In this document: positions 23,035 through 26,000 of the stretch, one piece after another
Position numbering within the stretch: position 1 is the stretch's first letter
Layout: each line of letters opens with the position of its first letter
DNA from: Macrostomum lignano
Taxonomy: Eukaryota
DNA length: 64,000 bases
Direction: 5' to 3'
NCBI GenBank assembly: GCA_002269645.1
Contig: NIVC01002244.1
Span: 62,001-126,000, forward strand
Notes under the pieces: generated by a model
The model's database searches: none
What the model was told of the DNA's origin: nothing
What the model saw: the letters and a program-made list of their open reading frames with translations, nothing else
Program-made: the position numbers and the translations under genes

Positions 23035-26000
23035 CTATAGCTGCTGCAGAAGCCACTGAGCAGTTTGATGATCCCGGAGCACGCAGGCAGACGTGGCCGA
23101 CGCTGCGAAGCCGCAATTCGCTGTCCGCTTCGACGCTCCGCTGCACAAGCAGAAGGTCTCGGAGGTGGCCAAAACTCCTGGCTGACCGTCGTCCGACCAG
23201 CCACCGATGGACAGAATTCGGGTGCCACCGTCCAGGGCGACGGCCGACAGGTTGCTCTTGGCTTGCAGCATCTGCAATTGGGTACAGCTGACTGGGTTGC
23301 ATTTGTATCTAAAAAAATATTTATGCGCATCGTAAATGTGCCGTGGTCTTCGCGCGTGTGTTGTACCTGTTTACACTTCCTGTATCTGTGAACAGTTTGT
23401 GCCCATGTTCACATTCTGCATCTGTGTACAGGTATCAATTCTCATTCTCATTCTGAACCTACATCACATACGAGCGTAGAAGTCTGTTCTCTCACCTGTC
23501 CTACCTCTACCCATTCGTTGTCCAGTCCACTGAGTCGGTACTTCTCGATCGAGCGCAGCCTCTTCTCCCCATCGTTGCCCCCAACTGCATAGACTGCGTC
23601 GCCAATAGCAACCAGAGCGACGCCACTTCGCGGATGGCACATACGACCAATGAGAGTCCACTGGTCAACATCCGGGTCGTACAATTCGGCCGTGTCGTGG
23701 TAGCGCTGCCCGTCGAAACCTCCGGCTACGAAGACTCTCTCGCCAATGGCTGCGGCGCCGGCGTCGCTGCGCACCACGTGCAGGCTGGCGACCTGGGTCG
23801 AGGTAAAGAAAATTCAGACTTTTGTATTCACCTAACATTCGAAAGCAAAAGCATCAACATCACGGTTAGAGCTCTGCGTGAACCCAGAGCTGCAAATTTC
23901 GGCATGAACACGCCTGCAAAACTCTGGTGCACACCTATTTGTACATAGATACGCCTTCCGGATGCAGTATCGAAAAACGCAATAACTTAATCAGCAATCA
24001 TTCAGCAAGTTACAGACAACAGTTAGCAGCTGCAAACCTCAATCCAGACGCTCTCCCCAGCTTGAAGCCGTTCAACGGAGCTAAGCCGGGCAGTCAGTCC
24101 GCGCTGATCTTGCGCCACCACTTCGCCGGAGTGGCCGCCGATGGCGTACATCGCGCCCGTCTCGGTGGCCGCGCAGCTGACGTAGTACCGTTTATGCGTC
24201 AGACAGGAGCCGATGTGCCAGCCAAGCTCGGGCTGGCGCAGGCTGTAGCGCCACACAGCCCGCAACGCCTGCTGACCGTCGTAACCGCCGATGACGTAGA
24301 TGACTCCGTCAACCAGCAGGCAGCCGGAGTAGACGCGAGCGCCCAGCTGACCGATGTGATTCGATGGAAGACCGTGGCCAGTCCTACTTCTGCTTCCACT
24401 GTTCGGACAGCGAAGAAGCCAGCAGTCGGCTCGCGGGTTGTACACTTGACATGCCGCCTGAGGACCCGTTGTGCCGGTAGCGGTCTGAACCTGCGGCACC
24501 TTTTTCTTTCTTTCTTTCTTTCTTCTTCAGCGCTCGTCAGCGGCGCGGCGGCGCCGAAATAGACGGGGGCCAACGCCCCATGTTCCGGAGGAGCGAGAGG
24601 GCCAAGCCCGGTTCGGTAAGGAGGCGCTCCACTTCAGTGCCGACCAGGCGAGTGCGGTGCGCGTCCCCCCTCGGGCAGCTGTAGATCGCGTGCAGGCTCG
24701 AGTCCGGTGCCCCGCAGTCCTGGCAGAGCGGGGAGTCCGTCAGGCCGAAACGGTGTCGGACCTCGGCGGCGAGCATTGAGGCACCGGCTCGGAGTTGGCA
24801 GACCGCCGTGTGCTCGGTCCGGCCTGCGGCACCTGCTGTTGCTGCTGGTTTGCTGCATTATCGGCATCGTGCGCCGATTGGTTGGTAGCTTCTGCTGCCA
24901 CTCTGCCTGCGACTGCGATGGGCGCAGGTCTTTGACCCCAGCCGCCGAACACGAGCACAATCTGCATAGTGGTGTGTAAATATTCTATAAATGTTAGCCG
25001 GTAGTTGAGGAAGTGGAGAAGGAAGGCTGTGGGCAGGACAGGCGACTCGGCGCCGATGATGCGGCCTGCCAGCTGGAGTCGGCGACTGCGCAACCGGTCG
25101 CTTGGACGGACGAGGGCGACACGGCGACTCATCGTGCGTCAGATTGCTTTATCCTGCAGCTCCAGCAACTCAAAAACTAGCGTGTTTTAGTGCTCTTTGA
25201 GTTTGTCTGTGTGCAATTCTGAGTGTGTTTTCGCTAAAAAGAGGTTGCTGTGATGATAATGTTGAAAGTGGGTCGATTTCCACGATTCGAAAGCTCAACG
25301 GTAAATTTTTCGATGGCAAAAGTCGAGAAGCAGGGCCAATGCAATTGCTGAAAAAGCTTTCTCTAGCGCTAGCTGGCTCCCATTGGGCCATACACTTTAG
25401 TCTCACCTCGTGCGGCTCCCTTGGCCTCGAGTTGACAGAATTCGCGCCCCCACCAGAGTGCCGAGTTCGGCTCTTTCCCGTTGCAGAGTTATTCAGCATG
25501 GCGACAGACCAGGGAGGCGGTGACCAGCGCATCAGATCCGGATAGCTCATGCTGAGCCGAGCTCTCTGGCCGGGCTCGAGCAGACCGAACCGGACGCACT
25601 CGGAGAGCCGCGCGGCCGCTCGCTGGTGGCCGGGGTTGGCGCGTAGCCAGCCAGCAGCAGCAGCCAGCACCTGCTCCTCTGATTGACAGTTCAAAGCGTT
25701 GTGACTCAGTATGCGATGCACCTACGGATGAGAATGGGAAATACTCGAATGAATGACTATAGAAAAATCTATAGCACAAGGGGCTTCGCACAAGGGGCTT
25801 TAGCACCAGGGGCTTTAGCACCAGGGGATTTAGCACCAAGGGGATTTAGCACCAAGGGGCTTTAGCACCAGGGGCTTTAGCACCAGTGGCTTTAGCACCA
25901 GGGGCTTTAGCACCAGTGGCTTTATCACCAGGGGCTTTAGCACAAGGGGCTTTAGCACCAGGGTGATGATCATGAGCAAATAAGCATATGTTATAAATAG

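What the first reader, a model, noticed from the sequence alone, without database searches (positions are those of the whole stretch)
24490..24834. LINE fragment inserted at an AG|GT proto-splice site in a KLHL10-like exon: a candidate intron gain caught in the act
Seen: a 321-bp LINE 3' end with a 12-bp TSD (AGGTGCCGCAGG on the gene strand) splits the first kelch exon at ..QQQQQ|VPQ... Because the TSD begins AG-GT, the first copy supplies a GT donor (24832) and the second an AG acceptor (24500). Removing 24832-24500 (333 nt, phase 0) restores the original reading frame with no scar. Unspliced, the frame stops at 24742-24740, before all kelch repeats. Every other exon of the gene is intact. 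Caveat: the donor (GTGCCG) is weak and the acceptor follows a purine (GAAA)n tail, though MPEG1 copy E also appears to use a CACAAAAAG acceptor (38184). Established: TSD-at-AGGT insertion is a proposed intron-gain mechanism, documented mainly for DNA-transposon introners, and KLHL10 is a spermiogenesis gene. A LINE-derived case would be unusual.
Basis: partly seen in the sequence, partly recalled or inferred. Interest (0 to 1): 0.85.

Follow-up and report, generated by a model that had tools for sequence, protein, structure and literature searches.

The report
Young LINE insertion in a kelch exon
One of three near-identical copies of a flatworm (Macrostomum lignano) KLHL10-like gene carries a very recent LINE insertion in a coding exon; it could in principle be spliced out without a scar, and GenBank annotates it that way, but the evidence favours an ordinary broken spare copy.

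Summary
Window 24502-24822 is a 321-nt, 5'-truncated 3' end of an RNase H-bearing non-LTR retrotransposon. It has an ORF2 C-terminus, a stop codon and a (GAAA)n tail, and is flanked by a perfect 12-nt duplication (AGGTGCCGCAGG). It sits in exon 4 of a six-exon BTB-BACK-Kelch gene.

The window is Macrostomum lignano Mlig_3_7 contig NIVC01002244.1, and the gene is BOX15_Mlig018832g2. Two syntenic copies in the same assembly (g3 and g1) have the exact empty site in an uninterrupted exon. The insertion is therefore real, and it is recent: g2 and g3 differ by about 0.2-0.3%.

The GenBank protein for g2 (PAA59644.1) equals the scarless splice product, so the "intron" is already annotated. That is not independent evidence. 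The annotation pipeline kept multi-mapping transcripts and reads. mRNAs from g1 or g3 would force a GT-AG gap at the duplication.

The splice signals are poor. The donor is GTGCCG, while 9 of 9 genuine local donors have G at +5. There is no pyrimidine in the 20 nt before the acceptor AG, seven competing AGs lie nearby, and GC content is 68%.

With two intact copies present, a tolerated null copy is the most likely reading. True intron gain remains possible (about 15%) and is easy to test.

The parts
24823..24834 (-). Target-site duplication, upstream copy (AGGTGCCGCAGG on the gene strand). It holds the candidate donor GT at 24832-24831, after codon CAG.
24502..24822 (-). 5'-truncated non-LTR retrotransposon 3' end (321 nt), in the same orientation as the gene
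   Evidence: absent from L002 and L003
24540..24821 (-). Open 94-codon remnant of the LINE ORF2 C-terminus (CCHC-like motif). Its stop, TGA, is at 24539-24537.
24502..24528 (-). Purine microsatellite tail of the LINE, GAAGAA(GAAA)n. It forms the last 27 nt of the candidate intron before the AG.
24490..24501 (-). Target-site duplication, downstream copy. It holds the candidate acceptor AG at 24501-24500.
24500..24832 (-). Candidate 333-nt phase-0 intron (GT...AG). It is implied by the GenBank protein PAA59644.1.
24740..24742 (-). In-frame TGA reached if the insert is retained. The product would be 402 aa without any complete kelch blade.
27380..27702 (-). Exon 1 (ATG at 27702). It holds the only g2/g3 coding differences: 27685, 27676 and 27423.
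26011..26359 (-). Exon 2 (second half of a degenerate BTB domain, start of BACK)
25407..25721 (-). Exon 3 (BACK domain and linker)
24038..24961 (-). Exon 4 (kelch blades 1-3). It is 591 nt and uninterrupted in copy g3, and is split here by the insertion.
23496..23792 (-). Exon 5 (end of kelch blade 3, blades 4-5)
23035..23271 (-). Exon 6 (kelch blade 6; stop at 23037-23035)

Best explanation
A very recent target-primed reverse transcription event placed a 5'-truncated LINE 3' end into exon 4 of one of three syntenic copies of a BTB-BACK-Kelch (KLHL10-like) gene. The copy is g2 = BOX15_Mlig018832g2, in the partly duplicated genome of Macrostomum lignano line DV1.

Shown:
- the insertion, its target-site duplication and the empty sites in g1 and g3;
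- the stop codon 31 codons into the insert;
- that the deposited gene model is scarless.

Inferred:
- g2 pre-mRNA mostly retains the insert. It would then be degraded by nonsense-mediated decay, because two exon junctions lie downstream of the stop, or it would yield a kelch-less 402-aa product.
- The copy is tolerated because g1 and g3 supply the function.
- The annotated 333-nt intron is an alignment gap. mRNAs of g1 and g3 were mapped onto g2, and the aligner slid the gap to the only GT-AG register that the 12-nt duplication allows.
For: - Empty sites in L003 and L002 match the window minus the insert and one repeat copy. The six-exon model with a continuous 591-nt exon 4 reproduces the g3 protein exactly.
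- g2 and g3 differ by 8-12 substitutions over about 4.27 kb. None lies in the 996 nt of coding sequence downstream of the insert, so there has been no time for decay or for selection to show.
- Three collinear copies exist, with flanks 96.6-98.5% identical.
- The annotation methods kept near-best BLAT hits within 1% and up to 1000 STAR multi-mappings. Transcripts that cluster at 95% identity share a name prefix (PMC5730564). The nearest g2-specific coding variant is 836 nt of mRNA from the junction.
- Splice signals are weak. The donor is CAG|GTGCCG, with C at +4 and +5, while 9 of 9 genuine donors in this gene and in the neighbouring CNOT6-like gene have G at +5.
- The acceptor is AAG, while 9 of 9 genuine acceptors are YAG. 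Pyrimidines make up 0 of the 20 nt before the AG, against 52-76% of the last 25 nt in this gene's five introns. There are 7 AGs in the last 40 nt, and GC is 0.68 against 0.37-0.52.
- From established knowledge, GAR-rich runs act as exonic splicing enhancers rather than as 3' splice-site tracts.
Against: - PAA59644.1 is exactly the scarless product, which is what true splicing would also give.
- 24832 is the best-scoring GT available upstream of the stop.
- A CTGAC branch-like motif sits 38 nt upstream of the AG.
- Weak signals are used nearby. Intron 4 of this gene uses GTTTGC in all three copies. The CNOT6-like gene uses GTGCGT. By homology, MPEG1 copy E appears to use an AAAAAG acceptor.
- No RNA data could be examined, so retention of the insert is inferred and not shown.
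Confidence: 0.65

Rival explanations
1. Nascent intron. g2 pre-mRNA is spliced from GT 24832 to AG 24500 in an appreciable fraction of transcripts. The LINE fragment plus one duplication copy would then already behave as a new phase-0 intron that is polymorphic among gene copies.
For: - The geometry is exact and frame-restoring, and the GenBank model equals this product.
- The exonic CAG| plus GTG gives 5-6 contiguous U1 pairings, and this is the best GT upstream of the stop.
- A CTGAC motif lies 38 nt from the AG.
- The paralogues have no intron here.
- Non-LTR-derived introners are documented (PMC12130899).
Against: - The annotation is confounded by cross-mapping.
- The donor lacks +4A and +5G, there is no polypyrimidine tract, and seven AGs sit upstream of the scarless one, four of which would shift the frame.
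- The body of the candidate intron is GC-rich and exon-like.
- Redundancy with g1 and g3 removes any need for rescue.
Confidence: 0.15
2. Imprecise rescue. The 24832 donor (or another GT) is joined to a better downstream acceptor that is also in frame: 24491 (loses VPQ), 24458 (loses 14 aa) or 24347 (loses 51 aa, as in UniProt A0A1I8FV91). The products would carry small deletions in the non-conserved loop of kelch blade 1.
For: The acceptors at 24491, 24485, 24458 and 24347 are CAG, lie in frame with 24832, and have 20-60% pyrimidines upstream. An independent gene model from the ML2 assembly uses QQQQQ|LGARVY. The loop is an insertion of about 40 aa of low-complexity sequence relative to KLHL10 homologues.
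Against: The donor is the same weak one. The ML2 model also mis-splices the BACK domain through a GTCCTG donor, which suggests an ab initio artefact. There is no transcript evidence.
Confidence: 0.12
3. Assembly artefact. The insert would not be present in the animal's genome.
For: Only one assembly could be read directly, and no second copy of this LINE was found in about 97 kb examined.
Against: The structure is a textbook retrotransposition product: 5' truncation, tail and a perfect 12-nt duplication of a site seen empty in two copies. A model from the independent ML2 assembly carries the g2-type alleles (D9, R94) and breaks its exon exactly after QQQQQ.
Confidence: 0.02

Closest known systems
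Ordinary exonic LINE insertion alleles made by target-primed reverse transcription (for example disease-causing L1 insertions in human exons)
   Same: 5' truncation, sense-strand 3' tail, a 12-nt target-site duplication, a premature stop in the host reading frame, and presence in only one of several gene copies.
   Different: The tail is a (GAAA)n microsatellite, not poly(A). The element belongs to an RNase H-bearing clade. The host is a neopolyploid flatworm in which two intact copies remain.
Introners, i.e. transposon-derived spliceosomal introns (Huff, Zilberman and Roy 2016, from my own knowledge; Gozashti et al. 2022, PMC9860276; 2025, PMC12130899)
   Same: A transposon sits in a coding exon with splice dinucleotides co-opted from the target-site duplication. 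Removal would be scarless. The paralogues lack an intron at this site.
   Different: Introners are multi-copy families whose members are demonstrably spliced and usually carry at least one good splice signal. Here there is a single copy with poor signals and no attributable transcript. About 82% of classified introner families are TIR DNA transposons and about 5% are non-LTR.
Apparent introns created by mapping transcripts onto a paralogue or allele that carries an indel (a known annotation artefact in duplicated genomes; from my own knowledge)
   Same: A gene model with a 'canonical' intron that coincides exactly with a transposon insertion plus one duplication copy, in a genome with near-identical copies and permissive multi-mapping.
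   Different: Not proven here, because the reads themselves could not be inspected.
KLHL10 (a BTB-BACK-Kelch adaptor for Cul3; needed for spermiogenesis in mouse and Drosophila, from my own knowledge)
   Same: BACK domain plus six kelch blades. The best named hits are KLHL10 from arthropods, birds and molluscs, at 30-42% identity over the kelch region.
   Different: The BTB domain scores below Pfam's cut-off (E = 0.0067). Blade 1 has an extra loop of about 40 aa. Orthology and testis expression were not tested.

Membership tests
Non-LTR retrotransposon (LINE) insertion made by TPRT | The sequence is the 3' end of a LINE (ORF2 C-terminus) | tested here: met
   There were 66 HMMER hits. In the long hits checked, the match lies at the extreme C-terminus of proteins with Exo_endo_phos + RVT_1 + RNase_H or RVT_1 + RNase_H. 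The alignment to P0122 covers residues 1286-1372 of 1377.
Non-LTR retrotransposon (LINE) insertion made by TPRT | A-rich or microsatellite 3' tail abutting the downstream duplication copy | tested here: met
   GAAGAA(GAAA)n at 24528-24502, directly followed by the duplication
Non-LTR retrotransposon (LINE) insertion made by TPRT | Target-site duplication verified against an empty site | tested here: met
   The 12-nt repeat is present once in L003 and once in L002
Non-LTR retrotransposon (LINE) insertion made by TPRT | Other copies of the same element family in the genome | tested here: inconclusive
   No copy was found in the 64-kb window or in L002 and L003. The best protein match anywhere is 54-57% identical, and the word-index search found nothing. 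The whole genome could not be searched.
Transposon-derived spliceosomal intron (introner-type intron gain) | The insertion lies in coding sequence at a position that has no intron in related gene copies | tested here: met
   g3 and g1 have an uninterrupted exon 4
Transposon-derived spliceosomal intron (introner-type intron gain) | GT...AG boundaries whose use restores the reading frame | tested here: met
   24832-24500 is 333 nt and phase 0, and gives a 703-aa product identical to PAA59644.1
Transposon-derived spliceosomal intron (introner-type intron gain) | Splice signals comparable to the host's genuine introns | tested here: not met
   The donor is GTGCCG, while 9 of 9 genuine donors have G at +5. 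The acceptor is AAG, while 9 of 9 are YAG. Pyrimidines are 0 of 20 before the AG, 7 AGs lie in the last 40 nt, and GC is 0.68.
Transposon-derived spliceosomal intron (introner-type intron gain) | Transcripts from the insertion-bearing copy lack the insert | not testable with these tools
   No RNA reads were accessible. The annotation is confounded by multi-mapping.
Transposon-derived spliceosomal intron (introner-type intron gain) | Many similar copies acting as introns in other genes | tested here: inconclusive
   No other copy in about 97 kb examined
BTB-BACK-Kelch (KLHL) proteins, KLHL10-like | BACK domain and a six-blade kelch propeller | tested here: met
   Pfam BACK E = 4.4e-14 and Kelch_1 E = 6.9e-38 with 4 stretches. 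Six GG-containing blades can be read in the translation.
BTB-BACK-Kelch (KLHL) proteins, KLHL10-like | BTB/POZ domain | tested here: inconclusive
   Pfam BTB scores 17.0 bits against a cut-off of 20.5 (E = 0.0067), covering residues 72-167
BTB-BACK-Kelch (KLHL) proteins, KLHL10-like | Orthology to KLHL10 (reciprocal best hit or phylogeny) | not tested
   The only evidence is that the top named hits are KLHL10

The most novel reading that the evidence does not exclude
The g2 copy is transcribed and its LINE fragment is removed precisely, using the AG|GT supplied by the target-site duplication. This would be a newly born LINE-derived intron in an animal. It would be polymorphic among near-identical gene copies of one genome, with the ancestral intron-less state preserved next to it as a built-in control.
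Probability: 0.15. Interest if true: 0.7.

Novelty: new member of a known kind. Interest (0 to 1): 0.3.

Why it matters
If splicing of the g2 copy were shown, this would be a rare, datable example of intron birth from a retrotransposon in a metazoan. The pre-insertion state survives in the same genome, which would allow direct measurement of how good a brand-new intron has to be.

As it stands, the main value is cautionary. In duplicated genomes annotated with multi-mapping RNA data, a transposon insertion in one gene copy can be written into GenBank as a canonical intron and an intact protein. This happens because the target-site duplication lets the aligner find a GT-AG register. Such models can hide null copies and can seed false 'recent intron gain' calls.

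Tried and rejected
- **Word-index search with the LINE peptide:** it found nothing. Only the exhaustive HMMER search identified the insert.
- **First kelch-domain search:** one search returned the ML2 model P0001 but missed P0153, which contains the query at 100% identity. P0153 surfaced only. This is a sensitivity gap of that tool and it is unexplained.
- **Locating P0001 on a contig:** it is not on record, so the ML2 DNA could not be read.
- **Expression data for Mlig018832:** there were no matches in paper full text or in the supplements of three M. lignano papers. The M. lignano hits come only from NCBI/UniRef. No Logan-derived hit came near 100% identity, even for the neighbouring CNOT6-like gene, so the absence of transcript-derived proteins says nothing.
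- **A pre-existing intron hidden in the low-complexity loop of blade 1:** rejected. That would have made the insertion intronic and harmless. The g3 protein is reproduced only with a continuous 591-nt exon, and the loop is GC-rich like the exons.
- **dN/dS of the downstream kelch exons:** not feasible. g2 and g3 have no differences downstream of the insert and only three coding differences in all.
- **Dating the insertion from divergence to other LINE copies:** not possible, because no other copy was available.
- **Donor scores:** the donor scoring matrix I used is a generic metazoan one written from memory. Only the comparison with the 9 local introns should carry weight.
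Full report
**What is at the coordinates.**
On the minus strand the sequence reads ...CAG CAA CAG CAG|GTGCCGCAGG, then a 321-nt insert, then AG|GTGCCGCAGG TTC AG.... 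The 12-nt direct repeat lies at 24490-24501 and 24823-24834, exact and spaced 333 nt apart.

The insert (24502-24822) has an open 94-codon frame on the gene strand (24821-24540). Its translation is RTEHTAVCQLRAGASMLAAEVRHRFGLTDSPLCQDCGAPDSSLHAIYSCPRGD..., which holds a C-x2-C-x8-H-x4-C motif. The frame ends at TGA 24539-24537. A tail GAAGAA(GAAA)n follows and runs up to the second repeat copy.

A word-index protein search found nothing. An exhaustive HMMER search of 1.84 billion representative proteins gave 66 hits at E <= 1e-3. In the long hits checked, the match lies at the very C-terminus of proteins that carry Exo_endo_phos + RVT_1 + RNase_H or RVT_1 + RNase_H. One example is residues 1286-1372 of the 1377-aa P0122; the best identity anywhere is 54-57%.

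The insert is therefore the 5'-truncated 3' end of an RNase H-bearing non-LTR retrotransposon, in the same orientation as the gene. No second copy exists in the window.

**The host gene and the organism.**
The top protein hit identified Macrostomum lignano. The window is identical to GenBank contig NIVC01002244.1 of assembly Mlig_3_7; L001 equals window 37702-13035.

The gene lies on the minus strand and has six exons:
- 27702-27380
- 26359-26011
- 25721-25407
- 24961-24038 (this exon holds the insert)
- 23792-23496
- 23271-23035

All introns are GT-AG. With 24832-24500 removed, the coding sequence is 2112 nt / 703 aa. Pfam finds BACK (E = 4e-14), strong kelch repeats (E = 7e-38) and a sub-threshold BTB. 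The best named homologues are KLHL10, at 30-42% identity over the kelch region.

The insertion lies in an extra low-complexity loop of about 40 aa in kelch blade 1. Left unspliced, the frame ends at 24742-24740 after 402 codons, before any complete blade.

**The empty site.**
A later search returned three GenBank proteins with the same name prefix:
- BOX15_Mlig018832g2 (P0153, 703 aa)
- BOX15_Mlig018832g1 (P0272, 704 aa)
- BOX15_Mlig018832g3 (P0273, 703 aa)

g2 is the gene in the window. The loci of g1 (L002, NIVC01001121.1) and g3 (L003, NIVC01000833.1) are collinear with the window over genes and flanks, at 96.6-98.5% identity. Neither locus contains the insert.

Alignments of the two halves of exon 4 overlap by exactly the 12 nt AGGTGCCGCAGG (L003 8808-8819; L002 9557-9568). 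The L003 sequence equals the window sequence minus the insert and one repeat copy over the 108 nt shown; L002 differs from it at two substitutions in that stretch. A six-exon model with an uninterrupted 591-nt exon 4 reproduces the g3 protein exactly.

Three conclusions follow. The repeat is a true target-site duplication. The ancestral state has no intron here. The insertion is private to g2.

g2 and g3 differ by only 8-12 substitutions in about 4.27 kb (0.2-0.3%) plus satellite-length indels. Their coding sequences differ at three sites, all in exon 1. The insertion is therefore very young.

About 1-3 substitutions would be expected in the 996 nt of coding sequence downstream of the insert even without constraint. 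The intactness of the other exons therefore says nothing about function, and dN/dS cannot be applied.

**The 'intron' is already in GenBank, but this does not settle the question.**
P0153 (PAA59644.1) is letter-for-letter the scarless product, and its gene range is exactly 27702-23035. The deposited annotation therefore removes the 333 nt.

That annotation was built as follows (PMC5730564):
- De novo transcripts were mapped with BLAT, keeping all hits within 1% of the best (globalNearBest=0.01, minId=0.8).
- RNA-seq was mapped with STAR, allowing up to 1000 multi-mappings.
- Transcripts that cluster at 95% identity were given one name prefix.
- The authors report 180 Mb of duplicated non-repetitive blocks at >=95% identity.

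An mRNA or read from g3 or g1 that spans QQQQQ|VPQ matches g2 perfectly if a 333-nt gap is opened. The 12-nt duplication gives 13 equivalent gap positions, and exactly one of them is GT...AG, which spliced aligners prefer (the last point is from my own knowledge).

The nearest g2-specific coding variant (27423) is 836 nt of mRNA from the junction. Short reads therefore cannot assign a scarless junction to g2. The annotated intron is what true splicing would give, and it is equally what cross-mapping would give.

The older ML2-assembly model A0A1I8FV91 (P0001) carries the g2-type alleles. It ends its exon after QQQQQ too, but joins to LGARVY (acceptor 24347), and it also mis-splices the BACK domain. 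This supports the presence of the insert in an independent assembly. It does not support any particular splice.

**Would the spliceosome take it?**
I compared the candidate with nine genuine introns: five in this gene (all needed to produce the annotated proteins) and four in the neighbouring CNOT6-like gene, placed by fitting P0155 to the window.

| Feature | Nine genuine introns | Candidate (24832-24500) |
|---|---|---|
| Donor | GTGAGC, GTGAGA (x3), GTTTGC, GTGCGT, GTGAGT (x2), GTTAGA; G at +5 in 9 of 9 | GTGCCG, with C at +4 and +5 |
| Acceptor | CAG or TAG in 9 of 9 | AAG |
| Pyrimidines before the AG | 52-76% of the last 25 nt (five introns of this gene) | 0 of the last 20 nt |
| AG dinucleotides in the last 40 nt | 0-3 (five introns of this gene) | 7 |
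| GC content | 0.37-0.52 | 0.68 (exon-like) |

Of the seven AGs in the tail region upstream of the scarless one, four would shift the frame.

Several points favour splicing:
- 24832 is the best-scoring GT upstream of the stop.
- The exonic CAG plus GTG gives a run of U1 pairings.
- A CTGAC motif lies 38 nt upstream of the AG.
- Weak sites are used locally: GTTTGC in intron 4 in all three copies, and an AAAAAG acceptor in MPEG1 copy E, inferred from homology with another copy. That acceptor has a pyrimidine-rich stretch just upstream.

Better in-frame acceptors exist just downstream: CAG at 24491 (loses VPQ), 24458 (loses 14 aa) and 24347 (loses 51 aa). If the donor fires at all, an imprecise product is at least as likely as the scarless one.

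**Most likely mechanism.**
This is an ordinary, very recent LINE insertion into one of three redundant gene copies of a neopolyploid genome.

*Shown:* the insertion, the duplication, the empty sites, the stop codon, the redundancy and the permissive annotation pipeline.

*Inferred:* g2 transcripts mostly retain the insert. They are then degraded, because the stop lies upstream of two exon junctions, or they give a kelch-less BTB-BACK fragment. The copy persists because g1 and g3 cover the function.

I put this at about 0.65. Precise splicing (a genuine nascent intron) gets about 0.15, imprecise in-frame rescue about 0.12, and an assembly artefact about 0.02.

**Comparison with what is known.**
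The structure is a textbook TPRT product. The intron-gain idea matches the introner model, in which splice dinucleotides are co-opted from the target-site duplication (PMC11282704).

Retrotransposon sources are no longer unprecedented. In a survey of 8,716 genomes, non-LTR elements account for about 5% and LTR elements about 12% of classified introner families (PMC12130899). This locus fails or cannot be tested on the features that make an introner: good signals, demonstrated splicing and many copies.

It is best filed as a new instance of a known kind, an exonic LINE insertion allele. It is also a clean, cheaply testable candidate for intron birth, and an example of how multi-mapping annotation can turn a transposon insertion into a 'canonical intron'.

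**Verdict.**
- Observation: confirmed and strengthened.
- Interpretation: partly supported. The geometry and the empty site hold. Splicing is unshown and is disfavoured by the signals and by the redundancy.
- Interest: 0.3.

Noticed in passing
window 11302-15492 and 16987-21179: A 4.19-kb inverted repeat with arms 99.64% identical. Each arm carries an MPEG1/MACPF gene copy. The spacer of about 1.5 kb and its surroundings (15184-16910) hold LINE RT/RNase H reading frames.
   Followed up: partly
(query from window 23496-24961): The first homology search, run with the kelch region, did not return P0153, P0272 or P0273, although they contain the query at about 100% identity. They appeared only when exons 1-3 were searched. 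This is a sensitivity gap of the word-index tool and nearly hid the key evidence.
   Followed up: no
window 24347-24832 and 25677-26092: UniProt A0A1I8FV91 (the ML2-assembly model of this locus) uses the same donor at 24832 but the acceptor at 24347. It also joins AMEA|EQVL through a GTCCTG donor, skipping part of the BACK domain. This is probably an ab initio artefact.
   Followed up: partly
window 24037 (donor of intron 4); L003 and L002 equivalents: Intron 4 of the gene uses the non-consensus donor GAG|GTTTGC in all three copies, and the annotated proteins require it. M. lignano therefore tolerates T at +3 and +4 when +5 is G.
   Followed up: partly
window 21850-22320 (+) and 25043-25127: An RTE-like LINE 3' end with a (TTG)8 tail lies downstream of the gene. 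An 85-nt fragment 84.7% identical to it sits in intron 3, in the gene's orientation. Intron 3 has the same length (445 nt) in g3.
   Followed up: partly
window 25772-25963 and 27983-28288: Two satellite arrays: 15-nt units x12.7 inside intron 2, and 20-nt units x15 upstream of the gene. The intron-2 array differs in length between g2 and g3 (47-nt and 14-nt indels).
   Followed up: no
L002 8275-9429 compared with window 24962-25406: Intron 3 is 1155 nt in copy g1 but 445 nt in g2 and g3. g1 therefore carries an extra ~710 nt there, possibly another transposon insertion.
   Followed up: no
window 38072-38186: By homology with the copy at 18720-18840, MPEG1 copy E appears to splice ...ACT AG|GTGAGC to ...CCACAAAAAG|GTACTAC. 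That site has about 50% pyrimidines in the 20 nt upstream.
   Followed up: partly
window 45018-50202 (-): A CNOT6/CCR4-like deadenylase gene (LRR plus EEP nuclease), with one mismatch to BOX15_Mlig005024g1 across the fitted exons. It has five exons and four GT-AG introns of 483-1515 nt, and was used here as a splice-site reference.
   Followed up: partly
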